From contig NC_083435.1 of the NCBI RefSeq assembly GCF_020745735.1, forward strand, positions 37,597,090-37,661,089: a DNA stretch of 64,000 bases, given 5' to 3'. This DNA is from Hemiscyllium ocellatum. Its lineage: Eukaryota. The notes under the pieces are model-generated. The model had not been told where the DNA came from. It searched no databases and worked only from the letters and a program-made list of their open reading frames with translations. The position numbers and the translations under genes were made by a program. Below are positions 34,636 through 64,000 of this stretch, one piece after another; positions within the stretch are counted from its first letter, which is position 1; each line of letters begins with the position of its first letter.

Positions 34636-37199
34636 CCCTTCAAATGAGAGGTTTCTGCTGAGGCGTTTGTGACCTCTTCAACTCTCCTGGGACTCCTTGA
34701 GTATTCAAACAGGGAAGGAGCTCTTCAGGCATGATGTTTACAACAAAACTTTCAGCCACTCCTCTGACATCCGAAAGCACCAGCAGATGCAACTGGTGAG
34801 AAACCATGGCCTCTCCCACAGGAGAGACCCATTCAGTGTGAATTCATAATACTGCCTTTAATTGGTTCTCAGCTAACATGGCACACCAGGCGAAGTCGTT
34901 CAGGAGGTACACTCCTGTTGATGTGAGGTCAACCGCATACCAGTGTCTCCACACAGACTTGGAGCTGAGTCACCTGCTTCTGTTGCACTGAGAGTTGTCT
35001 GTGTTGTTTACTGTCCTGTGCTCTCACAGAGGACCTGTTATTCCAAAGCATCATCTGCCTCAGCAGGGTCTATCTCAAATCTCTCCCACCATCATCCATT
35101 CATTTCAAAAAGGTCAAATTTAACCTTTTGACTGAATCACCAAATGAAGACATCAATATGTACAAAAGGTCCTGTATAAATTCAGCTTCCTTTCGGTGCT
35201 GTCAGGTACAAGGCACTCACTGACTCTCTCTCTCTGACCAAGAAGGCAATCAGTTGGACAGTGATTAAAAAGATTTCAGCTTCTGATTGATCAGTATGAA
35301 CTCTGAGATGAGCAATTCCTGGGATAGTAATGGAAATACCTCAATTACCTTTAGTGTCTCTGGCCTATGCAGGGGGAGAATGAACAAGGAATACCGTTCC
35401 TCATCAGTCAGTCCAGCTGGGAAGTCAGGTAGGGCAGGATGTGGCTCAACTGTGACAGTCTCCATTGTCTCACATCATTTTACTATCTGGCTGCCCATGT
35501 GTCGAATGGCTTCTCAAACAAAGCAGTAGAAGTTGCTCAATGTTCAAGACAGTACCTTGTGGATTGGAGTGAATGGGAAAGAGAACATCAACACCCTACA
35601 ATAACGTGTATTTATACAGCAAGACATCCTGAAGTGTTTCACGCAGTTACAATCATATAGAAATTGACACCAAAACAAAGGAGATATGATGGGGGAATAG
35701 CACTGAGAATTTTGTCAACCACGATATGTGTCAACCAAGATGGAAACATCTCAGTTGTTTGCACAGCCTAATTTATCTCTTGAACAGCTACAGTTATGAC
35801 ATTCCTGAAGCCAAGGGAATGGAATTTACCCTGAAAATCCATAGGACGAGGGAATGAACTCTTCACTTGAGCAAATGCCTGCTAGCTTAGAAGAACTCCG
35901 CTGGAATACCGTTGTGACTGCAGGCTTTGTTTTTCGTCTGATTGCCGGGATTGGGATAGACTGGAGAATATTTGCTCCCTTTCTCGGTTGTGGTGTTGTG
36001 TATAGATTGATCTTAATGATAGAGAGGCACTTCAGAATTATTCGGAATGGCAGCAATTTGTCCTCAATAACTTAGTGATAAGGCAGAGCAATAGCATGGA
36101 AGGAAAGAATAAAAGGAAGCAATTCCTGCTCCCTCTCTCCTACAATCCCTTTGGAAATTGTACCCATTGTTTTCAAAAATCTGTGGGTCAGGAATTGGCC
36201 TGGTCAGCCCCATAAAAGATCAATAGCAGAACCACCCAACTCTGAACAGGCATCATCTATGAATGAGGGACAGATACGTTGGGGATTTTAGTGGTTCTAA
36301 AGGTTTAGTTAAAAAGATTTATAAGGTGGGAATATAGAGAAAATATAGAGTTTTGAGGGGGGAGTTCCTGAGCTTGGAATCTAGACGCTGAAGACCTGGC
36401 CATCATGATGACATGAAGGAAGTGGGGCAGATATACTAAAGAACTGAACTGCAGAGATCTGAGAGAGGTGGGGCTGGGGTTGGCAGAGAGAGAGGGAGTG
36501 AGGCCAGGGAGCAATTTGTGTTTGAACATGAGAATTTTATAATTGGAGGTACTGGGGAAGTACGGACTAATGTAGGTCAGTGAGCACAGCAGTGATATCT
36601 GAGAGTTAGGACAGAGAGTGCAGGGAGTATGAAGTTTCTGGATGGTGTGAGAAAATGGGAAGCTGGATAGGAGAGCATTAGTCTAGTCTAGAAGCATCAG
36701 CACCATGGATGAGGATGCCACAAGGGATGAACTATAGCCAGGTGGGAGGGTGTTGAAATGGGTAATTTAGTTAAACTCAAATTCCATGACTCTGCACCGA
36801 TTGAATACCTATTTCTTCACTTGCGACCTTAACCACTTAATCAGGAGACAGTGCAGTGATGTAACTCAGGAAAGGTTTGTTAACTTACAGGAATAATACT
36901 TAAGTCAATAGATTTGCTACCTAGACTTATCATGGTTTTTGCTTCCATATTCAACCAAGGTGCAGGTGACACTTAGGTTTTCTTCATTTCATCGCTGCTG
37001 TTGTCTTCAGCTTCTGGCTTGGACAACAGATTGTGGTCTTCAGTTTCAAGCTTGACATGTGCTTTGACCCTTGAAAGATGGTGCTTTGTTAACCCTTTCC
37101 AGGTACAACCGTATGCAATGATATTATTGAACTGCGGTGTAAATGAAAACAAACTGGTCAGTTGCACGGAGGAAGCTGTTGCCACAAAGCTATCAAGTC

Positions 37200-37800
37200 T
37201 GTCAATCAGCCACTCCAAATTCATCACATCCCTTCGCCTCCCGCTGTAAGGCCAGCAGTGTGCAACTCTACGCATGCAGCTGAATAAGATGTGTTTTATG
37301 CAGTTCAATAAAATTTATCCAAAATTGTCCTTGGCCGTTTCAACATCACAGTTCGGCATTGAAGGAAGTCTTAGAAGTCGGGAGTTGGAAACTGCAATGA
37401 GGGAGATGAATCCTCTTAGAATTCATCTTTTCCATCTTGGCATCCTCTGGTATGCACAAAGACATAGGAAACATTCAAGAGCTACTTTTTTGATTAGTGC
37501 ATCCTCAATGTGTTACTCCGGGATGATTCAATTCTTCAAATGAAAAATGCCCTGGACTCCAATGTGTTAGGCATTACCATCGAGAGAACCAAGCTGAATG
37601 CTTTTGAGCAGTTTTTACCAATTTGGAGAGTTTTGATGCCACTGTAGACAAGGAAGCAGACAGCAGGCTTTCCAAAGCATTTAGCATACTTTAGTAATGT
37701 GTGAAGAATTGTAAAGTCAGTGCAAGGACGAAGCTTTCTGTGCAAAGACATAATCCTCACCACCCTCCTTTATGATGCCCTATTAGGGGTTCAGCACTGC
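37200..37800 (+). mobile_element. Degraded RTE-clade LINE RT remnant
   Basis: DATVDKEADSRLSKA-F..L..V..ARTKLSV..IILTTLLY resembles RTE/BovB-type ORF2 after the RT core. Confidence 0.5.
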
Positions 37801-40375
37801 AGACATGTACACCATTAGTGCTTCCAATAGTACCACCTCTGCAGCACCCTCTCAGGATCCACTGTGAGGATTGCACTACAACCATTGAAGTCTCGGAAAC
37901 AAGTAACATCACCAGTGTTCTGCAAGGCCAACTGACTTAGGTGGGTCACATTACTGGTCTGGATAACCAGTAATTCAAAATTGCGTTGTACGGGGTGCTG
38001 ACCAATGATACAACCTTCCTAAAACTGTGATCTACAAATGAGTGTTGAAAGAGAGAGAGAGGTCCAACTGAGACAAGGCTGGGATTCTAAATGGTTTCGG
38101 GAATGTGAGATCAATCTCTGGCTCTTAATCACACTTATTCCTGATGAGACTTCCCATTATCTTCGAACCGTTTCCTATGAAGTCAATTATTTATTTGACC
38201 TTCGCTCTCATTAGACTTTGTTCTCTTATTTTTATAACTTCTCCCAAACAGAGTGACACATTTTACAATATGCTTTTTTACTCATTTATTCAGGAGAAGA
38301 GGATATGTACTGTCATGCCTGCACACTTAGTACCATGAGCCTGCATATCAGACTTAGATGATGAGCATTCTCATTATATCAAATGGTCACTGATAGGATT
38401 TTGATTTAGAGGTCATCTGCTGGGGAATATAGTTACTACAATTGGTGCTTGGAACAAATTACATTTCAACATTGTGGTAAATTTGCATAGAACCTAAAAT
38501 ATAGAGATTGCAAAGTAGATGATACTTGATCTGTATAGAGTGTGTGTAAAATATGTGCATGATGACAATCAGTGTATGAAAGATGAGATGTTGCTAATAA
38601 TCATACTTCAAGGTTTGGTTAATACATAGTCTTATGGAATAAAGGTCAAAAAGAATTGTACTGTAAAGACTATTACAGAACAAAACTCAAATAATAGTGT
38701 CATATAGCAAAACATGGTTTATCTTCTAAAACACTGCAAATTAAAACTCGACTAATGTAAAATAAGTCGATTGCTCTTTTTCAATTTGCATAATAAATCT
38801 TTCTACCTTTTCTCTAACAGCCATAATGCCAGGTACTTGATAAAGGTATTATGGCGATGTAGTAGGATGAACAGTTGTTGGAACTCGCTCCTTCAATCTT
38901 GATATACTGGAAACTCTCACTGAGAAATGGTGATATGCCTTTAACTAAAGATGGATTACCAGCTGAGTCGTGATATGTTGTGTATTTTTTTTTAATGAGC
39001 TAGAATTAAACATAATACTGTTAACTGATTAACATGCTTTGATTATTTCATCCTAAATAAACTTAAACTAGCCCTGAAATGTAAAGTTCTCTCCAAAAAG
39101 TTGTGATCTGTGGGGGTCTGAGGCTGAGCTGGAGCTTGAAGAGGATGACACTAACTGTTTCTTGTTGGAGATGAGTGGAGAGAAATTTTAAGAAATGTGG
39201 GAGCTGGAGTAATCCCTTGAGACAGTTACGTCATTCAATTAGATTATGGCTAATCCATATCTGAATTCTTTCACACTTACTCCCTTTGCCTAACCAAAAA
39301 ATGTTAACAAAATTAGGACTTGGAGGCAGATTTTGAATCATTGCAAGTGTTCTATTTTGTTTGGTTGCGAGAGTGTTATAAGCTGAATGTAATACTCATA
39401 TTTGTTTGTGATTTTACCAGTCTTCTCTATTGGTTTATAACTCAATAAATTCTTACACTGTAACCCAGTGTACCTGATTTGTCAGCACAATGTCCTCCTG
39501 TTCACTGAAATACTCAGAAGTATACATTCAGTGTTCAAAGGAGATGTGAAATTGATGCTTTTTGTCTTGCATTCATCAAGACTAAAATACAAGAAGCTAA
39601 CTGGAGAAAGAGAGTCAAATTTGTACAGGAAGAGAAGAAGGTGCTAATTAATTGTGCCAGCGTTGGTGAAGAAATGGAGCAAGAATAGTTAATCTTAGTT
39701 CTCAGATTGTGCAACTGGAATCTGATTGGTCAGGATGTTGCCATGGCAATGTAGCAGAGATGGGTAGAACCATGACCCATTTTCCATCAAAAAAAGGTGT
39801 AATATTCCTTTAGCCTCTTTAACGTAGGGTCCTCTGTTTTAATATATTTAGCTTCTGGATATGTGCAAATTCATCACATTGCAAGTTTGACTGAAAAATC
39901 TTCAATTACTTTTTTGGTGTAATTCACAGCACACTCCGCATTCTTTGATAAATGTTGTCCACCAGCAGAATCAGATCTAATGTTAGATGCAGTGTTCTGA
40001 AATTTGCAAGCACAGGCTGATAAAGCAGGATTGCCAATTAGGTAGCAGGATATGGTCATTCATACAGTTTGCCAGTTGTATGGCCGTTGGGGGTAACTCC
40101 ACTGACTAGAGTTCTGTCGAGCACAAAGGAAGATAGCTGTAGTGCTGAAGGTCAATCATCTCAGTTCCAGGGTAGCACTGCAGGAGATCCTCAGCTCAGC
40201 CATCTTAGTTTTTTTGTAAATGATCTCATGTCGCATATTTGATTTGATTTTACGGTCACGTTACTAAAGTACAGGAGTACGTAAAGAGTATAAGGTAGCA
40301 CCTTGCGTAGCAACTTTATGTACAAGTATCTAGGTGCAGAATCTTAAGGACAAGATAGAAAGAAAGAACAAAGTT

Positions 40376-40443
40376 AAACGTCGAATTCTCTGTTCCTGAG
40401 ATGCTGCCTGGCCTGCTGTGCTTTGACCAGCAACACATTTGCA
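40376..40443 (+). mobile_element. Short Penelope terminal fragment
   Basis: aaacgtcgaattctctgttcctgagatgctgcctggcctgctgtgctttgaccagcaacacatttgca, nearly identical to 11438-11505. Confidence 0.8.
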
Positions 40444-40629
40444 ATTGCAGTAATTATAGTATAGCATAAAACGTGCAAAGGTTAAAAGTTGCACATTGCA
40501 GACCTTTGGTTTAAGTAGAACACCAAAGTTGAAGGTTCAAATATTCTAGTCTTTCTAAAGGTTCAGCCATGGAGAGACCGCACTTTGAGAAATCATCTCA
40601 AGAGCAGAAGTCCTTGCAGAGGCGATGCC

Positions 40630-41160
40630 AGGCCCAAGGACCACTACTTACTGCTGTAAGACTACAATACATATCAGGAGACTGCCACACTGGGCCAAGC
40701 TGTTAATCACTTCTCAGATACTGAAGCAGCCTGTGTCTGTATACAGTAAGACCTGAACAGTATCCAGGCTTGGACTGATAAATGACACCATAGTCAATGG
40801 CCATCTCAAACAAGTCAGCATCTAACACTGCACCTTGATTTTCAATAGTATTACCATCACTGAATGTCACCAATGTAGGGGTCACCATTGACCAGAAACA
40901 CAATTGGACTTGCCATATAAAGACTGCAGCTAAAAAAGCAGGTCAGAGGCTAAGAATCCTGCAGTGAATAACTCACTTCCTGACTCTCCAAATCATGTCT
41001 ACTATCTGCAATGTACAAGGGGAGAGTGTGACAGGTCACACTCTCCCACAAGTTCCCTTTCAAGCTGCACACCATCCTTACTTCACTATAACTGGGTCAA
41101 ATACCCGGAACTCCCTTCACAGCAGCATTTTGAGTCCACCTATTATCAAATGATGTGGAG
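40630..41160 (+). mobile_element. Degraded CR1/L2-group LINE RT remnant
   Basis: ..VTIDQK.NW..HI.TAAKKAGQRL.IL..ITHFLT..YYLQ pattern of the LINE ORF2 C-terminal region. Confidence 0.5.
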
Positions 41161-43828
41161 AACAAAGAATTCTGTGTCCTATGATCCTGTCCCACTAACT
41201 ACCTGACCAAGGAGCAGTGCTCAGAAAGCTTGTACTTCCAAATACACCTATTGGACTATAACCTGGTGTTGTGTGCTTTTTAACTATTCTCAAATGGATC
41301 ACAACCAGAAATGCCAAATCCCATAAGTGAATTTAAAAAGGTAGATAAAAGTTTGATGTGATTTACATTAGTAACCAGTTAAAGAGCTGTGGGTGTCAGT
41401 GTTGTCTTTGTGTCTGTGTATCTAAAGCTGTGAAAGTTGGTAAAGTCCCTGATGTCAGCTGGAATGGACATTTGATTGTCGTCAATCAGTACTGCTGATG
41501 GACTTTCAGTTTTTATTCATTCAGGTAAGTTCTATTGTTTAGATACAGCCCAAAAGGTGTTCAACAATAAAACTCAAGGAATATCCTGATGTTCACTACA
41601 AATCAGTATCAGTGAGGCTTTTGAGTCAGTTTTCAAATCTCTCCCTGGCCTCACCTCCCCTGTCTCTGTACCTTCTGTATTGCACTGGGAAATCAGCAAG
41701 GAATTCTGCTCGTCCTGGAGTGGGATTTGAACCCACATCTGCGTGGGTTCTGTGACCATGATTAACGTTGTTCCAAAAGCCATATGAATCATTCCTCGGG
41801 TTCTTGGCTTCAACACACCCCCCAACCATAACTTTCACAAGCACATTGCAAAAAAAAAATTCTCGTAGATATGCACATTATTGGCCACGAAGCCAAGCCA
41901 ATCATGGTGTAATGCCTGTAAAGATTTTCTTTTCATGTACTATGGATTAAGAAACGGGAAAAGATACTGCTGTAAAACAAGGCACTGTTGTCGAAGTTGT
42001 AGGGTCAACAAAATAATGAATCACTGGGATTCCTTCTGTGTTATATCTTCTTGATTTACAGCAGTGGAGGAGGATGCATGTTTCAGCTCTGTGAGTGTCC
42101 ATTCAGACCAGTTTTACCCAGTGACTGACTTTTGATTGGTTTTTTGTTCAAGCGGGACAGTTGTGTGTCTGTTCAAGAGTGCTCACCATAGCAACAACGT
42201 TTTGATTAGTTCCTGGGCAGGTGTCGACAACTTTGTGATTGTGCTCAAACATTCACCTATAAAAGGGAAAGTACCAAAATCTCTCCCTCCCACTCTTTCC
42301 TTCTCTCTATCTTTTGAGTAGGAAAAGAAAATCTCGCTCTTGCTTGGTGTCTCTATCCCCAACCCCCTCCAAATTCCCTTCTTGAAAGGAAATGGGGAAA
42401 AACACATCCAGAAAGGATGAATCTTCAACCAGTGAATGAAAGACTGAGATTTGGTGTGTCCACTTTCTCATGTCCTCGTACAGGAGTTGAAAGAAATCCG
42501 AATCAAACGAATATAAAACAGCTCATGGGTCTCTAATCGAACTGGTGCCAGAACTGTACTTCACTGGCTGTTTGTTCCTTCCGTATCCATAATATTTGTG
42601 TCTTATCTCTTTATCTCTGTTTGTACATACATGGGATTATTTTTGTTAGAACTTAATTTTAAGAGTTGAGTGTTTTTGTCTTTTTCTTACCATTGGTTAA
42701 ACGTGTTTGGTTGCTGTTCGAACACTCATTGATGTTTCATTATTTTTATTTTATCTTCTTATCAATTTTGGTTTGGAGCTATCCATTGGGACCTGTGAGC
42801 GAAAGATAACATTTGAATTGTGGGTAAAAGCTTATGTTAAAAGGAAAGCAGACCAAACTAGCTTTTGTTTATTTGTGAGGCCAAGCCCAGAAGTTAATTC
42901 TACATTAGTTCCTGATCCAAACGCTCTATCAATGCTTCATAGCAGAGGAAGAAGACTGTGGTTTAAAAGCCAGCAGAAGTTGGCTATTAATGAGGTCAGT
43001 ATCTGGGAATTGGTTCCAGGAAGTCTGAAAAAGATGCTCAGTCAGGTGGCAGGTGTTAAATGATAACTTGGACCCTGTGGAGGAGGTGGTCAATCTGTTA
43101 GTGAGTGGTCAGATTTTGAATTGAATCTTGGAGTGTGTTTTTTTTATGACAGGGAATCTGGCTGTTGATGGTACAAGATGAAGATTTGAAAGCTCTCTGC
43201 CTAACCTCCATGAGTAGTTCATGGCAGCTCAGACAGAAAACTAAGTGAGACATATTTCTTTCTTTATCTGGGTGAACTGTAAAGGTGACCCTAATTGGCA
43301 TCTTCAGATGATTAATCAAGAAACAATAATCTCTGTGTGTGAATTAATGCATCGTGAAAATCATGTAAGTAACCTGGCCAGTCTTGTTGTTTTATTCATC
43401 CTTTTAACTTTTTTTTGTCTGTTTTCAGCCTCATTTACACAAAAGATAACTAGAGTTTATCGCAGAGACAACAACTAGATTATTTTGGCAGAGTAAAATT
43501 AAACCACAAAGTTACTGTGTTGTTAGTAACTGGCAAAGTCTTTTGTTTAATTATGAAAGTGTGTTTATAATTGATTATTTACTGAGTTGAGACTGGTTAT
43601 TCAAGTCTGATGAGAAACTATTGAGGGTCTTTGATAGTTTTAATTTTACTGTGCTGTGGATACCAAGATAGAAAGGCTGGTTTGGTTTGGCTGATTGTCA
43701 TAACAATACAATAAATAAGTTTTCTTGTTAATGATTAGGTACTCTTGTAATTTGAATCCAGTGATTTAATCAAATTTTCATATTGTGCCAACTCCTGGAA
43801 TAGTGGGATTTGATTTCCAATGCCCTAT

Positions 43829-44237
43829 TTCCTCATCTTCCGCCTGGGAACCCTCCAACCACAAGGGATGAACTCAGATTTCTCCAGTTTCCTCATTTCC
43901 CCTCCCCCCACCTTGTCTCAGTCGATTCCCTTGAACTCAGCACCGCCCTCCTAACCTGCAATCCTCTTCCTGACCTCTCCGCCCCCACTCCACTCTGGCC
44001 TATCACCCTCACCTTGACCTCCTTCCACCTATCACATCTCCATCGCCCCTCCCCCAAGTCCCTCCTCCCTACCTTTTATCTTAGCCTGCCTGACACCCTC
44101 TCCTCATTCCTGATGAAGGGCTCTGGCCCGAAATGTCGAATTTCCTGTTCCTTGGATGCTGCCTGACCTGCTGTGCTTTAACCAGCAACACATTTTCAGC
44201 TCTGATCTCCAGCACCTGCAGACCTCACTTTTTACTC
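43829..44237 (+). mobile_element. Penelope-like element (Neptune-type) 3' end, young copy
   Basis: LIFRLGTLQPQGMNSDFSSF* then a terminal repeat almost identical to 4375-4660. Hammerhead motif 44106-44141 with a C>T change in stem III. Confidence 0.9.
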
Positions 44238-44275
44238 GAATATTTCAGAGAATAGTTTGAAAGCGCTTTTTTTTA

Positions 44276-44580
44276 CATTAAACTCCCTACAGTGTGGAAA
44301 CAGGCCCTTCAGCCCAATCAGTCCACACCGACCCTTTGAAGAGTAACCCATCCAGACCCATTTCCCTCTGACTAATGCACCTAACACTACGGGCAATTTA
44401 GCTTGGCCAATTCACCTGACCTGCACATTTTTAGATTGTGGGAGGAAATTGGAGCACCCGGAAGAAGCCCACGCAGACACGAGTAAATGTGCAAACTCCT
44501 CAGACAGTTGCCCAAGACTGGAATCAAACCTGGGACACTGGTGCTGTGAGGAGCAGTGTTAACCACTGAGCCACCGTGCC
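44276..44580 (-). mobile_element. V-SINE (HE1-like)
   Basis: Full tRNA-like head (ggcacggtggctcagtggttaacactgctc), V core and tail. Confidence 0.85.
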
Positions 44581-45904
44581 AACTGTTCAGCTGGGAGTTT
44601 GGGATAAAAGCAATGTGCGATTCTGTGTGGAGTTAGTGGATGTGATAAAGAATTGAAGGATGAGTGATTTTGTTCCCTAAAGGATATTAGTGCTAGGTTT
44701 CGATGTAAATTGATGATATATTTACTGACATCCTGTCCAATTCACCATTTTGTCCCCAGTTCACAGGGTTCTCCATGTTAAAAGATCTCTCGTTGTTCTG
44801 AAACTATTCGGATTGTATTCAAGAAATTCATGATTTTTGGGCATGTAAATTTTCCCATTGTAACCACTGTTCCTTTACACAACACTTCTTTCATTGTAAC
44901 CTTCCCATTACTTCATCACTGTTATCAATACTGTAGGCAAATCCCACTAATATCCTAACTGCTTTTTGACTCCTTAATTTCACGCATAGCAATCTCCTGA
45001 ATGCTAAAATGCATCCTTTTGCAATACTTCTTCTGTTTCATCTTTTTCTTTTAGAATGGATGGCTCAGTTGGAAAACTTTCAGTCTGATACCCTTATATA
45101 TGAAACATCCCATTCCTGGGTATGGTGTTACTCTGTTTGCCTTTGTTGGAGCCACTGTGACATCTGTCACCCATGCAAGTATGTAGTGCAGAGTAATGGT
45201 TCTTTGAGGTAGTTCGCTGTCTCTTTCTATACTGTGTCCAGGGCTTGTCCTAATGTAGTATTATGGATAGACCATTGAAGAGGTTTAAGAGAAGAGGTAC
45301 TGGTCTAGGTTGACTGGTTCATTGCCTGAAATCAAGAAGTACAACTTGCATTACAAGTGATAACTCGGACTGTTAGGAGCTATGTAGAATACATATTGAG
45401 CTCCCAAAAGGTGATCATGTAGGATTCAACTGTCTCCTCCCAAAGACTGGAGGTGACCTCATCAGATTGGGTGGAGCTCAGTATAACTACTTTTGAACCA
45501 TTACCATATATAACATCTCCCCACAAGTTTTTACCTGACAGTTAACCCATTATGTATTCATGTAGATTCCATAGTATTATGTTTACTAGTGACCCAGTTC
45601 TCACACCCCGAAGACTCTGCCTTCACAAATGTAAACAATGGTTACTCGTTGCCCTGATGGCAGCTGGAGCAGTGGGAACCTGCTTGCGGTCGGAGTGGCA
45701 TGTCCACTTCTGGGTCCTCCAGCTCCCCCATTACTGCTGCTAAATTATCCCTGCCGTAAACAAACAGTCCATTCCTACAAGGCAACAAACATCGAGGCAT
45801 TTTACAGTTTACACACAGCATAACCCTGTGATTCTGATCAATGAACACTTTCTCGTGAATAAATCTTCATTTTATGGAGCTACGTGTGACTCCTTACTCT
45901 CATA

Positions 45905-48900
45905 CTCCCGTTAGTGTGATTCCCTCCCCTCACTCTCCTCCTGTCAGTGTGACTCCCTCCCCTCACTCTCCCCCTGTCAGTGTGACTCCCTCCGCTCTCT
46001 CGCCCCCGTCAGTGTGACTCCCTCCCCACACTCTCCCCCTGTCAGTGTATCTCCCTCCCCTCACTCTCCCCCTGTCAGTGTGACTCCCTCCCCTCACTCT
46101 CCCCCGTCAGTGTGACTCCCTCCCCTCACTCTCCCCCTGTCAGTGTGACACCCTCCCCTCACTCTCCCCCTGTCAGTGTGTCTCCCTCCCCTCACTCTCC
46201 CCCTGTCAGTGTGTCTCCCTCCCCTCACTCTCCCCCTGTCAGTGTGACTCCCTCCCCACACTCTCCCCCTGTCAGTGTGACTCCCTCCCCTCACTCTTCC
46301 CTTGTCAGTGTGACACCCTCCCCTCACTCTCCCCGTGTCAGTGTGACTCCCTTGCTTCACTCTCCTCCTGTCAGTGTGACTCCCCCCCCACACTCCTCCT
46401 GTCAGTGTGACTCCCCCCCTCACTCTCCCCCTGTCAGTGTGACACCCTCCCCTCACTCTCCCCGTGTCAGTGTGACTCCCTTGCTTCACTCTCCTCCTGT
46501 CAGTGTGACTCCCCCCCCACACTCCTCCTGTCAGTGTGACTCCCCCCCTCACTCTCCCCCTGTCAGTGTGACACCCTCCCCTCACTCTCCCCGTGTCAGT
46601 GTGACTCACTTGCTTCACTCTGCTCCTGTCAGTGTGACTCCCACCCTCAATCTCCTCCTGTCAATGTGACTCCCCCCTCACTCTCCCCCTGTCAGCATGA
46701 CACCCTCCCCTCACTCTCCCCCTGTCAATGTGACTCCATCCCCTCACTCTCCCCCTGTCAGTGTGACACCCTCCCCTCACTCTCCCTGTGTCAGTGTGAC
46801 TCCCTTGCTTCACTCTCCTCCTGTCAGTGTGACTCCCACCCTCACTCTCCTCCTGTCAGCGTGTCTCCCCCCTCACTCTCCCTCTGTCAGCATGACACCC
46901 TCCCCTCACTCTCCCCCTATCAGTGTGACTCCCACCACTCACTCTCCCCCTGTCAGTGTATCTCCCTCACCTCACTCTCCCCCTGTCAGTGTATCTCCCT
47001 CACCTCACTCTCCCCCTGTCAGAGTATCTCCCTCCCCTCACTCTCCCCCTGTCAGTGTGACTCCCTCACTCTTCCCCTGTCAGTGTATCTCCCTCCCCTC
47101 ACTCTCCCCCTGTCAGTGTGACTCCCTCCCCTCACTCTCCCCCTGTCAGAGTATCTCCCTCCCCTCACTCTCCCCCTGTCAGAGTATCTCCCTCCCCTCA
47201 CTCTCCCCCTGTCAGTGTGGCTCCCTCCCCTCACTCTCCCCCTGTCAGTGTGACTCCCTCCCCTCACTCTCCCCCTGTCAATGTGACTCCCTCACCTCAC
47301 TCTCTCCCTGTCAGTGTGACTCTCTCTCCTCACTCTCCCCCTGTCAGTGTGACTCCCTCCCCTCACTCTCCCCCTGTCAGTGTGACTCCTTCCACTCACA
47401 CTCCCCCTGTCAGTGTGACTCCCTCCCCTCACTCTTCCCCCTGTCAGTGTGACTCCTTCCCCTCACTCTCCCCCTGTCAGTGTGACTCCATCACCTCACT
47501 CTCCCCCGTCAGTGTGACTCCCTCCCCTCACTCTCCCCCTGTCAGTGTGCCACCCTCCCCTCACTCTTCCCCTGTCAGTGTGACTCTCTCCCTTCACTCT
47601 CCCAGTCAGTGTGACTCCCTCCCCTCACTCTCCCCGTGTCAGTGTGACTCCCTTGCTTCACTCTCCTCCTGTCAGTGTGACTCCCCCCCTCACTGTCCTC
47701 CTGTCAGTGTGACTCCCCCCTCACTCTCCCCCTGTCAGTGTGTCTCCCTCCCCTCACTCTCCCCCTGTCAGTGTGACTCCCTCCCCTCACTCTCCCCCTG
47801 TCAGTGTATCTCTCTCCCCTCACTCTCCCCCTGTCAGTGTGACTCCCTCCCCTCACTCTCCCCCTGTCAGTGTGACTCCCTCCCTCACTCTCCTCCTGTC
47901 AGTGTGACTCCCTCCCCTCACTCTCCCCCTGTCAGTGTATCTCCCTCCCCTCACTCTTCCCGTCAGTGTGTCTCCCTCCCCCTGTCAGTGTATCTCCCTC
48001 ACCTCACTCTCCCCATGTCAGAGTATCTCCCTCCCCTCACTCTCCCCCTGTCAGTGTGACTCCCTCCCCTCACTCTCCCCCTGTCAGTGTGACTCCCTCA
48101 CTCTCTCTCCCCTGTCAATGTGACTCTCTCACCTCACTCTCTCCCTGTCAGTGTGACTCTCTCTCCTCACTCTCCCCCTGTCAGTGTGACTCCCTCCCCT
48201 CACTCTCCCCCTGTCAGTGTGACTCCTTCCCCTCACACTCCCCCGTCAGTGTGTCTCCCTCCCCTCACTCTCCCCCTGTCAGTGTGACTCCCTCCCCTCA
48301 CTCTTCCCCTGTCAGTGTGACTCTTTCCCCTCACTCTCCCAGTCAGTGTCACTCCCTCCCCTCACTCTCCCCGTGTCAGTGTGACTCCCTTGCTTCACTC
48401 TCCCCCTGTCAGTGTGACACCCTCCCCTCACTCTCCCCCTGTCAGTGTGACACCCTCCCCTCACTCTCCTCCTGTCAGTGTATCTCCCTCCCCTCACTCT
48501 CCCCCTGTCAGTGTGACTCACTCCCCTCACTCTCCCCCTGCCAGTGTGTCTCCCTCCCCTCACTCTCCCCCTGTCAGTGTGACACCCTCCCCTCACTCTC
48601 CCCCTGTCATTGTGACTCCCTCCCCTCACTCTCCCCCTGCCAGTGTGTCTCCCTCCCCTCACTCTCCCCCTGTCAGTGTGACACCCTCCCCTCACTCTCC
48701 CCCTGTCAGTGTGACACCCTCCCCTCACTCTCCCCCTGTCGTTGTGACTCCCTCCCCTCACTCTTCCCCTGTCAGTGTGACACCCTCCCCTCACTCTTCC
48801 CCTGTCAGTGTCACTCCCCCCCTCACTCTCCCCCTGTCAGTGTGACACCCTCCCCTCACTCTCCCCGTGTCAGTGTGACTCCCTTGCTTCACTCTCCTCC

Positions 48901-50225
48901 TGTCAGTGTGACTCCCACCCTCACTTTCCTCCTGTCAGTGTGACTCCCCCCCTCACCCTCCCCCTGTCAGCATGACACTCTCCCCTCACTCTCCCCCTGT
49001 CAGTGTGACTCCCTCACTCTCTCTCCCCTGTCAATGTGACTCTCTCACCTCACTCTCTCCCTGTCAGTGTGACTCTCTCTCCTCACTCTCCCCCTGTCAG
49101 TGTGACTCTCTCTCCTCACTCTCCCCCTGTCAGTGTGACTCCCTCCCCTCACTCTCCCCCTGTCAGTGTGACTCCTTCCGCTCACACTCCCCCTGTCAGT
49201 GTGTCTCCCTCCCCTCACTCTCCCCCTGTCAGTGTGACTCCCTCCCCTCACTCTTCCCCTGTCAGTGTGACTCTTTCCCCTCACTCTCCCAGTCAGTGTC
49301 ACTCCCTCCCCTCACTCTCCCCGTGTCAGTGTGACTCCCTTGCTTCACTCTCCTCCTGTCAGTGTGACTCCCCCCCTCACTGTCCTCCTGTCAGTGTGAC
49401 TCCCCCCCTCACTCTCCCCCTGTCAGTGTGTCTCCCTCCCCTCACTCTCCCCCTGTCAGTGTGACTCCCTCCCCTCACTCTTCCCCTGTCAGTGTGACTC
49501 CCCCTCCTCACTCTCCCCCTGTCAGTGTGACTCCCTCACTCACTCTCCCCCTGTCAGTGTGACTCCCTCCCCTCACTCTCCCCCTGTCAGTGTATCTCCC
49601 TCCCCTCACTCTCCCCCGTCAGTGTGACTCCCTCCCCTCACTCTTCCCGTCAGTGTTCTCCCTCCCCCTGTCAGTGTATCTCCCTCCCCTCACTCTCTCC
49701 CTGTCAGTGTATCTCCCTCCTCTCACTCTCCCCCTGTCAGTGTGACTCCCTCACTCTCCCCCTGTCAGTGTGTCTCCCTCCCCTCACTCTCCCCCTGTCA
49801 GTATGACTCCCTCCCCTCACTCTCCCCCTGTCAGTGTGACTCTCTCTTCTCACTCTCCCCCTGTCAGTGTGACTCCTTCCCCTCACTCTCCCCCTGTCAG
49901 TGTGACTCCCTCCCCTCACTCTCCCCCTGTCAGTGTGACTCCCTCCCCTCACTCTCCCCCTGTCAGTGTGACTCCCTCCCCTCACTCTCCCCCTGTCGGT
50001 GTGACACCCTCCCCTCACTCTCCCCCTGTCAGTGTGACACCCTCCCCTCACTCTCCTCCTGTCAGTGTATCTCCCTCCCCTCACTCTCCCCCTGTCACTG
50101 TGACTCACTCCCCTCACTCTCCCCCTGCCAGTGTGTCTCCCTCCCCTCACTCTCCCCCTGTCAGTGTGACACCCTCCCCTCACTCTCCCCCTGTCATTGT
50201 GACTCCCTCCCCTCACTCTCCTCCT
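45905..50225. repeat. 33-bp-unit minisatellite, ~4.3 kb, roughly 130 copies
   Basis: Consensus CCCTGTCAGTGTGACTCCCTCCCCTCACTCTCC. The 11-residue periodicity in the ORF track (VSVTPSPHSPP / HTDRGRVRGGS) confirms 33 bp. Confidence 0.97.
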
Positions 50226-50746: not shown

Positions 50747-50798
50747 ATGTTGCTGATCCTTTTCACCATCTCCCTGTGTTTTTCCCGGGTCTCTCCCG
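50747..50798 (+). CDS. MHC class I-like heavy chain, exon 1 (signal peptide MLLILFTISLCFSRVSP)
   Basis: Hydrophobic 17-aa leader ending in G|GTAAGT (phase 1), in frame with the alpha1 exon. Confidence 0.85.
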
Positions 50799-51169
50799 GT
50801 AAGTACAGAACTCAGCTTTCCGTTCTCTCTCTCTCTTCTCCAGCTCAGGGCAAAGACCGGAACTCTCCTGGGATTTCACAGGGATGGAAATGTCAGTCGG
50901 TTTCTGTCAGGAATTAATGTCACAATTGTACTAGTGAAGAGCTGAGGGGCTAATTTCCTTTCATGTCTGTCTCACTCACTGTGTGTCTATGTTCTTTCTC
51001 TGACTTTCTGTGTCTCAGTGTACCACAATTTGTGTGTGTGTGGGTGGGGGTGGGGGGTGGGGGGGAGGTAGTGGGGGGTGGTGCTGTGTATCCTTCTGCA
51101 TGTATGTGTGTCTTTCTCTGGAGCTCTGCTTCTCTCCTTCTGGATATTTTTTCCTTTGGCCCTGTCCCT

Positions 51170-51545
51170 CTATCTCTGCTCTGTCTCTCTCTCTCTAAGT
51201 ATCTCACTTTCCCTTTCTTTGTATCCCTATGTTTCTGTTTCTTCTTTGTCTCTGTCTCAGTCTCTCCGTCTGTCCCTCCCTTTCTCTCTCTCTCTCTCTC
51301 TCTCTTGGTTCTCTCTCTGGTTCTTTCTCTCTCTCTGGTTCTCTATCTCTCTCTCTCTCTCGTTCTCTCTCTGTCTCTCTCTGGTTCTTTCTCTCTCTGG
51401 TTTTCTCTCTGTCTCTCTCTGGTTCTTTCTCTCTCTCTCTCTCTGGTTCTTTCTCTCTCTCTCTCTCTGGTTTTCTCTCTGTCTCTCTCTGGTTCTTTCT
51501 CTCTCTCTCTGGTTCTCTCTCTCTCTCTCTCTGGTTTTCTTGCTC
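51170..51545. repeat. (CT)n-derived low-complexity tract with ctctctctggttcttt sub-units, in class I intron 1
   Basis: Near-pure polypyrimidine strand, preceded by a G-rich tract at 51041-51080. Confidence 0.9.
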
Positions 51546-52993
51546 TTTTTTTCTGTGCTCCTGCCACTTTCCGTGGACATGTTTCACTGTCTGTTTCATT
51601 GTTCCTTTCTGTCTAACAGTCTTTCCCCATCTCTCTCCCTGTGGGTTTGCTCTGAGGGAAACAGCTTTTTCTCTCTCTTTCTCCTTCCCCACAGATTTAA
51701 AATGAGCTGTTGGTTTCTGAAGCCCAGTGGTCACATGAGTCTGAAAGTACCTGATGTTGTCTGCTCCTCATTAGTAGCCTCAGTATTTGGATAGGAGACT
51801 GTCTGTCTTAAAATACCAGGGACAGTCATCTTTAAGGCTCCCGCAGCCAAGTCAGAAGGTCTAGATCTGAGTCCCACCCTGGAGATTTGTCATAACAAGT
51901 TGATTCAAAATGCTTACAGCAGCCTGTTTAATGCTTGAACTGAAAAAATGGTTGACAATAAAAAGGCAGCTTCCAGGAGCATTTTCTTTCCTATCAGAAA
52001 TCTTCCGATGTATAGACTCATAGAGATGTACAGCATGGAAACAGACCCTTTGGTCCAACCCATCCATGTTGACCAGATATCCCAACCCAATCTAGTCTCA
52101 CCTGCCAGCATCTGGCCTTATCTCTATTTTCACTCACTGAAGATTCACTGATCCAAATCTTCAGGTCTCTGGATTATCAGATTTGGGATCTAGATTGGGA
52201 GGCGCAAATCAGGATTCTGGGATTGTCTGGGATTCTCCACAACTGTTCTTAACATGGACTTCAGAATCAGAGACTTGGGTTAGGTATATACACTCTAGAA
52301 ACACGCTCGGCCAGGTAAAGTTACCCAGTTTAATTCCTGGGTCGACCAGTGATCAGCTAATCATTACAACCAGACACCCTAAGCCTGGGACGATATCCTG
52401 AGGAACCTGTACGGAGACGTCCTGGAGCTGAGATAACTGAACTCCAAAAACTACAACCGTCTTCCTGTGTGCTCCAACCAGCGAAGAGTTTTCCCTTGAT
52501 ACCTCGAACTTCTTGATGCCATATTTGTCAAATGCAGGATAAAGGGCTGTGGGAGCAGGCAGGAAGGTGGAGGTGAGACCAGGATGAGATCAGCCATGAT
52601 CATGTTAAATGGAGGAGTGGGCTCAAAGGGCTGAATTGCCCACTGCCACTCCTAATTCGGGCCAGTCACTCTTTCCTCACCTCTTGAACTGAAAGAAGTA
52701 GCTGAAAAAGCAGAAAAGGGTCAGGTTACAGAAGTCTCCACCAGTCGGGTCAATGCATTCAGTATCGACCCTGATCAGAGGATGTGTGCCAGTGTCTTTG
52801 GGACTTTTTCAGCTGCCGTTAGAGCTATGGTAGGTATGTACTGGTGTGGATACACTATCCAGATTTCAGCATTCACGCCATCATTCTGATTTCACACCAT
52901 CACTATGTGGGTGAGTTTTCCTTGATCAGGTGGTAGTGTTTGTAAGTGTTTATTCAGATGTCCCTTGAATGTATTAATGTTTATTTTCTACAG

Positions 52994-53254
52994 ACAGGAA
53001 TGCATTTACAGTTATGTATTTAGCTACCTCTGGCACTGCTGATTTACCTGAGTATGTTGGAGTGGGAATGATCAATGGAGTTCCAGTGGCCTATTATGAC
53101 AGCGGTACCCCTCAGATAATCTCCCGTCAGCAGTGGATGACAGATGCCTTTGATGAAGAATACTGGGAATATCTCACAAATCGAGGGATTAAACATTGTG
53201 CCATTGCAAAAGAGAACTTGAAGATGATAATGAAGAATACAAACCAGACATCCG
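52994..53254 (+). CDS. MHC class I-like heavy chain, alpha1 exon (87 codons)
   Basis: ctacag|AC acceptor and G|GTAAGA donor. Encodes DRNAFTVMYLATSG..EYVGVGMINGVPVAYYDS..RQQWM..EEYWE..ENLK..NQTSG, with W51, Y59, W60 and the N86 sequon. Confidence 0.93.
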
Positions 53255-56445: not shown

Positions 56446-58075
56446 CTGACTCCCCTCCTCGTAAATATTAGTCAGCAGACGGAGGATAACTCCTCAATGT
56501 GTCATCAGAATGCCATGGAATCTTTTACATCTCTCATCAGAGAGAGAGAGCTGCTGGTCACCATACCTCAGGCAAGGGGACAGATTGGGGAGGAGAATCC
56601 TTCATGGTAACTTCAGCTGGTGTGGGAATTGAACCCATCTGTTGGTTTACTCTGCATTACAAGCTAGCCATCCAGCCAGCAGAGCTAACCAATACCCTCA
56701 GGTTAAGTAATCACCAGTTCTATCTTTCTGTGATGAGAGAGCAGCCTATGGTCCAGTTGGATGATGGTGACTTCACCTTGGAGATGATGCTATATAATGT
56801 GAGACTGCTTCAGCAGATCTCTTATTTGCTTTGAAGTAAGGTTGAGCTCTGATTCTATGCTAAGACTAAATCTCTGTGTGGGTATATGAATAGGAAGGGA
56901 TTAGGGGAGTACGGGCTAAATCCAGGCAAACGGGACCAGACTAATTTAGGATATCTGGTCGGCATGAATGAGTTGGTTGAAAAGGATCTTTTTCTGTGCT
57001 GTGCATCTCTATGACTGTGTCTCTATGAAGCCAGAAATCACATGACACCAGATTATAGTCCAACAGGTTTATTTGAAATCACAAGCTTTCAGAGGGTAGC
57101 CCCATCATCAGGTGTAGTGAGAGAGAAGCACACAGACAAGAATCTGGGCAGAGAGATCAAAAGATCACAAAAGTGGTGTGAATGGAGTGCCAAATAAGAA
57201 GTCACTGCAGCTGACCAAGAGTGTTAGACAGTGAGAGTAAAGTGTCAACAGCTGAATAACAACTGAAGGGGTGACCTGTAATCCCATTAAATGAGGCAGA
57301 GAGATAATTCCAAAACATTAAAAATACGGTGGTAATGGAGACAACCCAAATGCCTGGAATAACATGGAATAAAAACGGAAGCTGCTGGAAAAGCCCAGCA
57401 GTATCTGTCCAGAAAAACCAGAGGAAGGGTCACCAGACCCAAGACATTAATTCTGATTTTCCTCCCTATATGAGAGGGAGTACAGGTTTGGCATTTCATT
57501 TGAAAGATGGACAGGCGTTGTGGAGTGTGGGGCGATGATTGTATGACCATGAAGGGAGCAGAACGCAGGAATATTGTAACAGAGAGGCTCGTGCAGTGAT
57601 CCTATCTCGTGAGCTCATTGAACTTGCTTTATTAGCTACACTCCCCAGGAGATGAGTTCCTCACATTGATTTCCTTGCTGGTCCTTTGTCATTGACAGTG
57701 CAGGTATTGCCAGGATGGCTTCATGTCCCTACAGGGGAACAGGTTTTACCTCCTCCTGTACACCCTCAAAACTAGGATATACTTCCCAAGTTCCAGAGAA
57801 CTGCTTGGGTTTCACAAGATGAAGATATTCACAGACAATAGATTTCTTCCATGCAGGTGTTCCTTCAGTACTGTGTGCAAAATTGGTTTTACAGTAATAA
57901 ATCCTGCTGTAAACAATTCAATAAAGAAATCTATTGTAATAATCAGCTAGTTTAATTTTACTAGTGTTGCAATCCAGAGCCCACAGAGAAACCTATTACT
58001 GAGCGCACAGGGAAACCCATTACATATTAAATTTTCTAACAATAGTACCTTTTGTTTACCGTTCATTACTGACAG

Positions 58076-58351
58076 GAATTCACATTTTCCAATGGATAAG
58101 GAAAGTTGAAATAAATGATGACAGCTCCACTAATATCACGATGCGATTTGGATTTGATGGAAAGGACTTTATTAGCTTAGAGCCAGACAGAATGAGATGG
58201 ATCGCATCCAATCACTTTGCAGTGAAAACTGCAGAGAAATGGAATTCAGATGAATCCTGGAACAAATATTGGAAATGGCAGTTGGAAATAGAACTTGTTG
58301 AACGCTTAAAACTACGCTTACATTTTGGAAAGGAATATCTCAAAAGGACAG
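58076..58351 (+). CDS. MHC class I-like heavy chain, alpha2 exon (92 codons), no cysteines
   Basis: gacag|GA acceptor and G|GTATTT donor. Encodes GIHIFQW..FGFDGKDFISL..W..KTAEKWN..LE..VE.LK..L..GKEYLKRT. Confidence 0.93.
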
Positions 58352-58455
58352 GTATTTATTTCAGTTCTGATCTAACCTCACTGATCTATGAATCCGTTCT
58401 CCCATTCCATTCAGTGTCTGTCTGTTGTTTGTGTTTTCACCCTTTCCCATCACAG

Positions 58456-58734
58456 TTCAGCCTGAAGTGTTCATCTCCAGGAGGGAGCCCAATGGTCAGG
58501 ACAAGCCGCTCACTCTCTCCTGCCTGGTCACTGGGTTTTATCCTGCAGACATCGAGGTGACCTGGCTAAGGAATGGAGAGGTCATGTCTGAGACCCAATC
58601 CTCGGGGGTTCGACCGAACCACGATGGGACCCATCAGATCCAGAAAGAGATTGAGATCAATGCTGGGGATGAGGATCAATACTCCTGTCAAATTGAACAC
58701 AGCAGCCTGGCAGAGGCCCAGCTCTATCAGTGGG
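58456..58734 (+). CDS. MHC class I-like heavy chain, alpha3 (Ig C1) exon (93 codons)
   Basis: cacag|TT acceptor and G|GTAAGG donor. Encodes LSCLVTGFYPADIEVTWLRNGE..RPNHDGTHQ..YSCQIEHSSL..W. Confidence 0.95.
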
Positions 58735-63104: not shown

Positions 63105-64000
63105 TAGAACATAGAACATTACAGCGCAGTACAGGCCCTTCAGCCCTCGATGTTGCACCAACCTGTCATACCAATCTGAAACTCCTCTATTCCATGTACG
63201 TCCCTATGCTTGTCCAATGACGACTTAAATGTACTTACAGTTGGCCAATCTACTACCAGTGCAGACAAAGCATTCCATACCTTTACTACTCTCTGAGTAA
63301 AGGAACTACCTCTGACATCTGTCCTATATCTATCACCCCTCAATTTAAAGCTATGCCCCCTTGTGCTCGCCATCACTATACTTGGAAATAGGTTCTCCCT
63401 GTCCACCCTATCTAACCCTCTGATTATCTTATATGTCTCTATTAAGTCACCTCTCAATCTTCTTCACTTCAACGAAAACAGCCCCAAGTCCCTCAGCCTT
63501 TCCTCATAAGACCTTCCCTCTATACCAGGCGACATCCTAGTAAATCTCCTCTGCACCCTTTCCAAAGCTTCCACATCCTTCTTATAATGCAGTGATCAGA
63601 ACTGTATACAATACTCCAAGTGCAGCCATACCAGAGTTTTGTACAGCTGTAGCATAACCTCATGGTTCCAAAACTCGATCCCTCTATTAATAAAAGCTAA
63701 AACACTGTATGCCTTCTTAACAACCCTGTCAACCTGGGTGACAACTTTCAAGGATCTGTGTACCTGGACACCGAGATCTCTCTGCTCATCTACACTACCA
63801 AGAATCTTACCATTAGCCCAGTACTTTGCATTCCGGTTACTCCGACCAAAGTGAATCACCTCACACTTGTCCGCATTAAACTCCATTTGCCACCTCTCAG
63901 CCCAGCTCTGCAGCTTATCTATGTCTCTCTGTAACCTACTACATCCTTCATCACTATCCACAACTCCACTAACCTTAGTGTCGTCTGCAAATTTACTAAC
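63105..64000 (-). mobile_element. CR1 LINE 3' portion, runs off window
   Basis: ORFs 63596-63961 and 63140-63457 (LQRDIDKLQSWAERWQMEFNADKC; RGDLIETYKII); tail agaacatagaacat. Confidence 0.93.

What the first reader, a model, noticed from the sequence alone, without database searches (positions are those of the whole stretch)
58076..58351. Class I alpha2 domain has lost both cysteines of the canonical C101-C164 disulfide
Seen: aligning on QW..E (96-102) and LE..VE.L (160-168), position 101 is Val (QWIRKVE) and 164 is Leu (LEIELVERL). The exon has no Cys at all, yet reading frame and splice sites are intact. Established: this disulfide is near-invariant in class I and class I-like proteins and ties the alpha2 helix to the floor. 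Inference: paired replacement by aliphatic residues suggests a selected alternative fold, not decay. It may or may not already be a known trait of a shark non-classical lineage (UEA or UCA); I cannot verify that here.
Basis: partly seen in the sequence, partly recalled or inferred. Interest (0 to 1): 0.75.

Follow-up and report, generated by a model that had tools for sequence, protein, structure and literature searches.

The report
Shark class I gene without alpha2 disulfide
This exon belongs to an intact, conserved epaulette-shark non-classical MHC class I gene that does lack the usual alpha2 disulfide, but about a hundred related shark genes lack it too, so it is an old family trait and not special to this gene.

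Summary
The alpha2 exon (58076-58351) has intact AG/GT splice sites, is in phase 1 and contains no cysteine. Val stands at the C101 position and Leu at the C164 position.

The gene is the epaulette shark (Hemiscyllium ocellatum) RefSeq model XP_060706869.1. Its leader, alpha1, alpha2 and alpha3 exons lie in the window. The transmembrane and cytoplasmic exons lie beyond the window end.

It is not decaying:
- dN/dS against three orectolobiform orthologues is 0.13-0.22 for alpha2.
- Orthologues exist in at least 11 shark species.
- RNA-like runs hold the exon words but not the intron words.

The loss is not special to this gene. In 76 distinct alpha1-alpha2 sequences of a shark-only multigene clade, position 101 is never Cys (Val in 71). 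Position 164 takes 10 different residues. All 33 outgroup sequences, including the ray sister clade, have C101, and 32 have C164.

AlphaFold predicts a canonical class I fold, so "alternative fold" is not supported.

The family matches the published description of the UEA lineage. I could not read the UEA paper and found no named UEA sequences, so whether the cysteine loss is stated in print stays unverified.

The scan had already found this trait in at least five paralogues elsewhere in this genome, with the same verdict. It is real, ancient and selected, but of low novelty.

The parts
50747..50798 (+). Leader (signal peptide) exon, ATG at 50747, donor GT at 50799
   Evidence: tblastn with the orthologue P0159. 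Joined with the other three exons it translates exactly to residues 1-289 of XP_060706869.1.
52994..53254 (+). Alpha1 exon (261 bp, phase 1), with an unpaired Cys (mature residue 69, codon TGT 53197-53199)
   Evidence: AG/GT checked. 98-99% identical to Chiloscyllium orthologues. The Cys is present in 10 of 15 sequences of the sub-clade and in no other family member.
58076..58351 (+). Alpha2 exon (276 bp, phase 1) with no cysteine
58105..58107 (+). Codon GTT = Val at the C101 position (mature residue 98)
   Evidence: PDB alignment. The codon is identical in 4 orectolobiform species. Val in 71 of 76 family sequences.
58294..58296 (+). Codon CTT = Leu at the C164 position (mature residue 161)
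   Evidence: PDB alignment. The codon is identical in 4 species. Leu in all 15 sequences of the conserved sub-clade, variable in the rest of the family.
58456..58734 (+). Alpha3 (C1-set Ig) exon with both Ig cysteines intact
   Evidence: Pfam PF07654 hit on P0259.

Best explanation
The exon is the alpha2 domain of a functional, membrane-anchored non-classical MHC class I gene of the epaulette shark (RefSeq XP_060706869.1, 395 aa, gene about 22 kb).

It belongs to a shark-only multigene family, very probably the published UEA lineage. The common ancestor of that family replaced Cys101 with Val more than about 300 million years ago, so the family lost the alpha2 helix-to-floor disulfide.

The fold is still the ordinary class I fold. 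The disulfide is replaced by hydrophobic packing of Val101 on the floor strand against the residue at 164 under the helix (inferred, not measured). Once it had no partner, position 164 was free to change. It became one of the more variable helix positions among paralogues.

The loss sits at the N-terminal (A-pocket) end of the groove, which is remodelled family-wide: Tyr7 is replaced (Val in most members) and Trp167 is lost. The C-terminal anchor residues Thr143, Lys146 and Trp147 are kept. The family therefore probably binds ligands that are not held by a free peptide N-terminus (inferred).

This particular gene is the slowly evolving member found in nearly every shark genome sampled, with Leu164, Arg167, Arg171 and a long cytoplasmic tail.
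For: - Gene identity: the four window exons translate exactly to residues 1-289 of P0259 = XP_060706869.1. The called gene spans 22,334 bp, so it runs past the window end. Pfam finds MHC_I plus C1-set.
- Family trait: about 100 clusters at 90% identity in 13 shark species, including the squalomorphs Heptranchias and Pristiophorus. In their alpha2 domains position 101 is V/I/L/A and never C. In 76 distinct sequences it is V71, I2, L2, A1. Position 164 is L27, F20, Y7, C6, S5, G4, D3 and others, with at least 20 changes on the tree. Outside the family C101 is 33/33 and C164 is 32/33. The ray sister clade has both cysteines.
- Monophyly: the shark family forms one clade with SH-aLRT 99 and a stem length of 0.72.
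- Selection: NG86 dN/dS against C. punctatum, S. tigrinum and R. typus is 0.13-0.22 for alpha2, about 0.2 for alpha1+alpha2 and 0.4-0.55 for alpha3. Fisher p is 1e-5 to 1e-7.
- Expression (indirect): runs X1 and X35 of the same species hold 0.69 of 58076-58734 and 0.31 of 57300-58734. That is 0.88 times the exon-only expectations of 0.787 and 0.352. DNA runs hold 0.82-0.87 of both stretches.
- Fold: the AF2 model has pLDDT 94.5. Foldseek gives TM 0.92-0.93 and rmsd 1.6-1.7 A to chicken BF2.
- Groove residues.
Against: - The RNA nature of X1 and X35 is inferred from word shares.
- The UEA label rests on matching the published description (multicopy, sharks only, divergent from UAA). No sequence named UEA was available for the tree.
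- MHC linkage was not checked here.
- The AF2 model cannot show whether the helix is less stable without the disulfide, and I had no coordinates to measure the Val-Leu contact.
- The order of events (C101 lost first, then 164 released) comes from the distribution of residues. It is not an ancestral reconstruction with codons.
- Association with beta2-microglobulin and any ligand are untested.
Confidence: 0.85

Rival explanations
1. The gene is a decaying pseudogene, and the two cysteines were lost through relaxed constraint.
For: Large class Ib families usually contain pseudogenes. Earlier scan notes describe broken class I copies elsewhere in this genome. The transmembrane and cytoplasmic exons are outside the window and were not inspected.
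Against: All four exons are open with AG/GT sites and match a 395-aa RefSeq model exactly. Alpha2 dN/dS is 0.13-0.22 with p below 1e-5. The same Val and Leu codons are kept in four species. Orthologues follow the species tree across at least 11 sharks. RNA-like runs hold exon-only words.
Confidence: 0.03
2. The paired Val/Leu replacement is a peculiarity of this gene, or of its small orthologue group. It would be a coupled, compensatory swap that creates a new fold variant.
For: Leu164 is invariant in the 15-sequence sub-clade that holds this gene. That sub-clade also has Arg167, Arg171 and, in most members, an extra alpha1 Cys.
Against: Val101 is shared by 71 of 76 family sequences whatever stands at 164. 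Position 164 has 10 different residues and at least 20 changes. Six members have Val101 with a lone Cys164. The AF2 model is a canonical class I fold.
Confidence: 0.07
3. The family is not UEA. It is a separate shark class Ib lineage that has not been described.
For: No protein named UEA was found in any database search. The family keeps Thr143, Lys146 and Trp147, while the UEA abstract, as I recall it, stresses loss of the invariant residues.
Against: The literature I could read lists only two expanded shark class Ib families. UBA is derived from UAA. UEA is more ancient, multicopy and sits in the MHC-Ib cluster (PMC12562908, PMC10751288). This family is multicopy, shark-only and deeply divergent. 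It is too large and too widespread in public genomes to have been missed by those surveys.
Confidence: 0.05

Closest known systems
Shark UEA non-classical class I lineage (Almeida et al. 2021, J Immunol 207:824; cited in PMC10751288 and PMC12562908)
   Same: A multicopy class Ib family with classical exon and domain architecture, deeply divergent from UAA. It is found in sharks of both superorders and not in rays or chimaeras at comparable identity. Several peptide-terminus-binding residues are replaced.
   Different: Membership could not be shown with named reference sequences. I could not read the paper, so I do not know whether it states that the alpha2 cysteines are absent. This gene is the conserved near-single-copy member with a long cytoplasmic tail, and it keeps Thr143, Lys146 and Trp147.
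Classical shark class I (UAA; nurse shark structure PDB 6lup)
   Same: Same fold. Foldseek TM is 0.86 to 6lup_A and 0.92-0.93 to chicken BF2. The alpha3 Ig cysteines and the N86 glycosylation site are the same.
   Different: Only about 34% identity. There is no C101-C164 disulfide. Tyr7, Arg84, Tyr159, Trp167 and Tyr171 are replaced.
PDB 9ch4_A, 'Ig-like domain-containing protein' (class I-like chain; from its sequence probably an elasmobranch class Ib molecule, which is my inference)
   Same: One of the best sequence matches in the PDB (E 5e-50). The alpha1 helix motif is strikingly similar around the RQQWM...AFD..YWE stretch.
   Different: It keeps both alpha2 cysteines in the alignment. Overall identity is only about 35-40%.
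Teleost class I sequences that lack Cys164
   Same: Examples of class I alpha2 domains without the canonical disulfide outside sharks, such as P0252 from Thunnus and P0014/P0018/P0131.
   Different: They keep Cys101 and lose only Cys164. They are unrelated to the shark clade.

Membership tests
MHC class I heavy chain | Alpha1-alpha2 groove domain plus a C1-set alpha3 domain, each on its own phase-1 exon | tested here: met
   Pfam PF00129 (E 3.5e-23) and PF07654 (E 1.2e-17) on P0259. Exon structure. AF2 model with TM 0.92-0.93 to solved class I chains.
Classical class I (UAA-type) | C101-C164 disulfide in alpha2 | tested here: not met
   Val at 101 and Leu at 164, with no Cys anywhere in the exon.
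Classical class I (UAA-type) | Invariant residues that bind the peptide termini (Y7, Y59, R/Y84, T143, K146, W147, Y159, Y171) | tested here: not met
   V7, N84, Q159 and R171 replace four of them, and W167 is R. Y59, T143, K146 and W147 are kept.
Shark UEA lineage | Large multigene family | tested here: met
   About 100 clusters at 90% identity, with 8-16 per species in Hemiscyllium, C. punctatum, Cetorhinus, Carcharodon and Mustelus. Earlier scan notes place paralogues from 1.64 Mb before to 0.14 Mb after this window.
Shark UEA lineage | Present in sharks (Selachii) and absent from rays and chimaeras | tested here: met
   Members occur in 13 shark species of both superorders. The best ray proteins are 36-38% identical and fall outside the clade. 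No chimaera hit appeared. Absence is only as good as the databases searched.
Shark UEA lineage | Linked to the MHC, in the class Ib cluster next to UDA | not tested
   Flanking DNA of the chromosome was not available. All Hemiscyllium paralogues lie on one 49-Mb record.
Shark UEA lineage | Groups with named UEA reference sequences in a tree | not testable with these tools
   No protein named UEA was returned by any search. The papers that define the lineage are not held.
Shark UDA lineage | Single or low copy, present in rays and chimaeras too, with 8 of 9 invariant residues kept (from my memory of the Almeida et al. 2020 abstract) | tested here: not met
   This clade is shark-only and lacks four of the invariant residues.

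The most novel reading that the evidence does not exclude
The loss of the alpha2 disulfide may never have been analysed as an evolutionary event. In this reading Cys101 became Val once, in the stem of a family more than 300 million years old. That freed position 164, under the alpha2 helix at the A-pocket end, to become a variable residue that tunes ligand binding (10 residues, at least 20 changes). Most of the replacements are one nucleotide step from a Cys codon. The family would then be a natural experiment in running the class I fold without its most conserved staple. This gene would be the slowly evolving, near-single-copy member (Leu164, Arg167, Arg171, an unpaired alpha1 Cys69, a long cytoplasmic tail) with a conserved function of its own.
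Probability: 0.25. Interest if true: 0.5.

Novelty: new member of a known kind. Interest (0 to 1): 0.27.

Why it matters
The C101-C164 bond is among the most conserved features of class I and class II beta1 domains, and it is a checkpoint in class I folding and peptide loading. An old, expanded and selected family that works without it shows that the staple is dispensable for the fold. It also points to a groove whose N-terminal end works differently.

For this scan the practical message is different. The many "alpha2 without cysteines" notes in the epaulette shark genome are all one family trait of a described lineage. They are not independent discoveries.

Tried and rejected
- **Wrong leader.** My first guess for the leader exon (ATG at about 52783) was wrong. 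tblastn with the orthologue put it at 50747.
- **Reads not laid.** The second run search used 57300-58734 only.
- **Papers not held.** The two J Immunol papers that define UDA and UEA are not held under PMC id, DOI or PubMed id. Five full-text searches found no statement about UEA cysteines.
- **Supplement uninformative.** The supplement of PMC10751288 labels genes only as 'MHC-Ib', without lineage names.
- **No named references.** No protein named UEA, UCA or UDA turned up, so the tree has no named shark reference lineages.
- **Orthologue DNA limited.** It was unavailable for H. ocellatum, C. plagiosum, C. carcharias and H. francisci, and not on record for the Heptranchias proteins (P0161, P0169) and S. 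canicula isoform X3 (P0154) that I looked up. dN/dS therefore rests on three orectolobiform orthologues.
- **Rejected readings.** Pseudogene, alignment artefact and a gene-specific compensatory swap were all rejected (see the rival explanations).
- **Not run.** Complex prediction with beta2-microglobulin was not run, because no shark beta2-microglobulin sequence was in hand and I make no binding claim.
- **Not measurable.** The AF2 coordinates are not exposed, so the Val-Leu distance could not be measured.

Full report
**Observation**

Window 58076-58351 is a 276-bp phase-1 exon with AG before it and GT after it. Its 91 complete codons (58078-58350) encode a class I alpha2 domain with no stop codon and no cysteine.

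phmmer against all PDB chains matches class I heavy chains, best E 2.8e-14 for Anolis 7cpo_A. In the printed alignments Val (GTT, 58105-58107) lies under C101 and Leu (CTT, 58294-58296) lies under C164.

**The gene**

- My first guess for the leader exon was wrong.
- tblastn with the closest full-length relative (P0159, Chiloscyllium plagiosum) placed the exons as follows:
  - leader: 50747-50798
  - alpha1: 52994-53254
  - alpha2: 58076-58351
  - alpha3: 58456-58734
- All four exons have canonical splice sites. Joined together, they translate exactly to residues 1-289 of P0259 = XP_060706869.1.
[quoted passage not shown] The window therefore comes from the epaulette shark.
- The RefSeq model has 395 residues with a transmembrane segment and a cytoplasmic tail of about 75 residues.
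- The called gene spans 22,334 bp, so those exons lie up to about 9 kb beyond the window end and were not inspected.
- Pfam finds MHC_I and C1-set.

**Not decay**

I obtained orthologous loci from C. punctatum (L001), Stegostoma tigrinum (L002) and Rhincodon typus (L003).

| Region | Nei-Gojobori dN/dS |
|---|---|
| alpha2 | 0.13-0.22 |
| alpha1 + alpha2 | about 0.2 |
| alpha3 | 0.4-0.55 |

Synonymous changes are in excess, with Fisher p between 1e-5 and 1e-7. The GTT and CTT codons are identical in all four species, while neighbouring codons carry synonymous differences.

**Expression (indirect evidence only)**

No reads were laid. I sent nothing from those places to any search tool afterwards.

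The two run searches are still informative.

| Runs | Share of words, 58076-58734 | Share of words, 57300-58734 |
|---|---|---|
| Exon-only expectation | 0.787 | 0.352 |
| X1 (same species, small "RNA?" run) | 0.69 | 0.31 |
| X35 (same species, small "RNA?" run) | not listed | 0.31 |
| DNA runs of the species | 0.78-0.82 | 0.82-0.87 |

- X1's shares are 0.88 times the exon-only expectation in both searches. That is what a contig holding the exons without the upstream intron would give. X35 appears only in the second search, with the same 0.31.
- RNA-like runs of three related species show the same exon-only ratio (0.37-0.38 against 0.17).
- This suggests transcription. It does not show splice joints.

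**A family trait**

- A full HMMER scan with the alpha2 exon found close relatives only in sharks.
- A second search, with the Heterodontus relative, returned about 100 clusters at 90% identity. They come from 13 shark species:
  - Galeomorphs: Hemiscyllium, two Chiloscyllium, Stegostoma, Rhincodon, Heterodontus, two Scyliorhinus, Mustelus, Carcharodon, Cetorhinus.
  - Squalomorphs: Heptranchias and Pristiophorus.
- The best ray proteins are only 36-38% identical.
- In every alpha2 domain of the family position 101 is V, I, L or A, and never C.
- In a maximum-likelihood tree of 109 alpha1-alpha2 sequences, the 76 shark sequences form one clade. SH-aLRT support is 99 and the stem length is 0.72. 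A ray clade is the weakly supported sister group.
- Residue counts from that alignment:

| Position | 76 shark family sequences | 33 sequences outside the family |
|---|---|---|
| 101 | V71, I2, L2, A1 | C in 33 of 33 |
| 164 | L27, F20, Y7, C6, S5, G4, D3, W1, H1, T1 | C in 32 of 33 |

- The ray sequences have both cysteines.
- Position 164 needs at least 20 changes on the tree. It ranks 23rd of 180 columns for number of changes, while position 101 ranks 145th.
- Six members keep a lone Cys164.
- The simplest reading is that C101 was lost once in the stem of the family and the unpaired 164 then changed freely. Most replacements (F, Y, S, G, W) are one nucleotide step from a Cys codon. This is inference from residue distribution, not a codon reconstruction.
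- "Paired replacement" is therefore not the right description.

**This gene within the family**

- It sits in a 15-sequence sub-clade (SH-aLRT 99).
- Within that sub-clade, the group holding this gene largely follows the species tree, with short branches. It contains one sequence from each of ten species and two from Mustelus.
- All 15 sequences have Leu164, Arg167 and Arg171.
- Ten of the 15 have an extra, unpaired Cys in the alpha1 helix. This gene has it at mature residue 69, codon 53197-53199.

**Fold**

- AlphaFold2 on residues 18-290, using a 102-sequence alignment (A1), gives mean pLDDT 94.5 and pTM 0.82. The usual strands and helices are present.
- Foldseek against the PDB gives TM 0.92-0.93 and rmsd 1.6-1.7 A to chicken BF2, and TM 0.86 to nurse shark 6lup.
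- The prediction is an ordinary class I fold, not an alternative one.
- The model says nothing about stability, and I could not access the coordinates to measure the Val-Leu contact.

**Groove context**

Alignments to solved chains and family counts give this picture.

| End of the groove | Residues | State in this gene and in the family |
|---|---|---|
| N-terminal (A-pocket) | Y7 | V here; Tyr absent from the five commonest residues in the family (V in 51 of 76) |
| N-terminal (A-pocket) | W167 | R here; Trp absent from the five commonest residues in the family |
| N-terminal (A-pocket) | Y159 | Q here; kept in only 14 of 76 |
| N-terminal (A-pocket) | Y171 | R here |
| C-terminal | T143 | kept; 57 of 76 in the family |
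| C-terminal | K146 | kept; 69 of 76 in the family |
| C-terminal | W147 | kept; 76 of 76 in the family |

Y59 and the N86 glycosylation site are also kept. The lost disulfide lies at the same end of the groove as the lost A-pocket residues. I infer that this end is remodelled and that ligands are not anchored by a free peptide N-terminus. This is untested.

**Comparison with what is known**

- The papers I could read say that sharks have two expanded class Ib families. UBA is derived from UAA. UEA is more ancient, multicopy and lies in the MHC-Ib cluster. There are also the single-copy UDA, UFA and UGA (PMC10751288; PMC12562908).
- A shark-only, multicopy, deeply divergent clade fits UEA and nothing else on that list.
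- I could not prove membership. The defining papers are not held, and no database protein carries the name.
- I therefore cannot say whether the absence of the alpha2 cysteines is stated in print. It would at least be visible in any published alignment.
- No member of the family has a solved structure; the best PDB matches have about 35% identity.

**Earlier notes of this scan**

After my own analysis I looked these up. At least five follow-ups on paralogues in the same genome, from 1.64 Mb upstream to 0.14 Mb downstream of this window, reached the same verdict: a fixed trait of a shark-only family, very probably UEA. Another note on this window describes the asymmetric groove, and my counts agree with it. 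Two notes describe class I/VLIG conjoined or broken genes nearby. One of them overlaps the expected 3' end of this gene. I did not examine it.

**Verdict**

The gene is intact, conserved and probably expressed. The loss of the disulfide is ancient and maintained by selection. It defines a whole described lineage and has been found repeatedly in this scan. It is of low novelty, with modest residual interest in how the fold and the A-pocket end work without the staple.

Noticed in passing
window 45913-50225: A 33-bp minisatellite with about 133 copies (87% matches) ends about 520 bp upstream of the class I start codon. On the + strand it reads as long Ser/Pro/Cys-rich open frames that are almost certainly not coding.
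   Followed up: partly
window 53197-53199 (alpha1, mature residue 69): An unpaired Cys in the alpha1 helix, present in 10 of 15 sequences of this gene's conserved sub-clade and in no other family member. Whether it is free, buried or forms an intermolecular bond is unknown.
   Followed up: partly
beyond the window end (about 64001-73080 in window coordinates): The gene's transmembrane and cytoplasmic exons lie outside the window, because the gene spans 22.3 kb. Earlier scan note s1-191581, starting 6,881 bases beyond the window end (about 70881-74216), describes a class I cytoplasmic exon running into a VLIG-like module. That place overlaps the expected 3' end of this gene.
   Followed up: no
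window 45100-45180: A stretch 81% identical to the alternative first exon of C. punctatum isoforms X1 and X2 of the orthologue (P0256, P0260). It may be an alternative 5' exon upstream of the minisatellite.
   Followed up: no
window 51288-51546 (wider CT-rich region about 50950-51800): A CT-rich simple repeat inside intron 1 gives long spurious Ser/Leu open frames on both strands.
   Followed up: no
window 1186-1738: Open frames with tandem C2H2 zinc-finger motifs (H/C links of the TGEKPF type) at the start of the window.
   Followed up: no
window 7517-8969 (-), 27444-28099 (+), 63599-64000 (-): Reverse-transcriptase-like open frames of LINE-type retroelements are scattered through the window and the gene's introns.
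   Followed up: no
PDB 9ch4_A against P0259 residues 23-286: A solved class I-like chain deposited as 'Ig-like domain-containing protein' shares a strikingly similar alpha1 helix motif with this family but keeps both alpha2 cysteines. It may be one of the recently reported elasmobranch CD1-like class Ib molecules, but this is not verified.
   Followed up: no
L003 (Rhincodon typus), about 37089-45148: The whale shark RefSeq model P0261 (810 aa) joins the orthologue of this gene to a second, paralogous class I unit 35 kb downstream. It is probably a read-through annotation of two neighbouring genes.
   Followed up: partly
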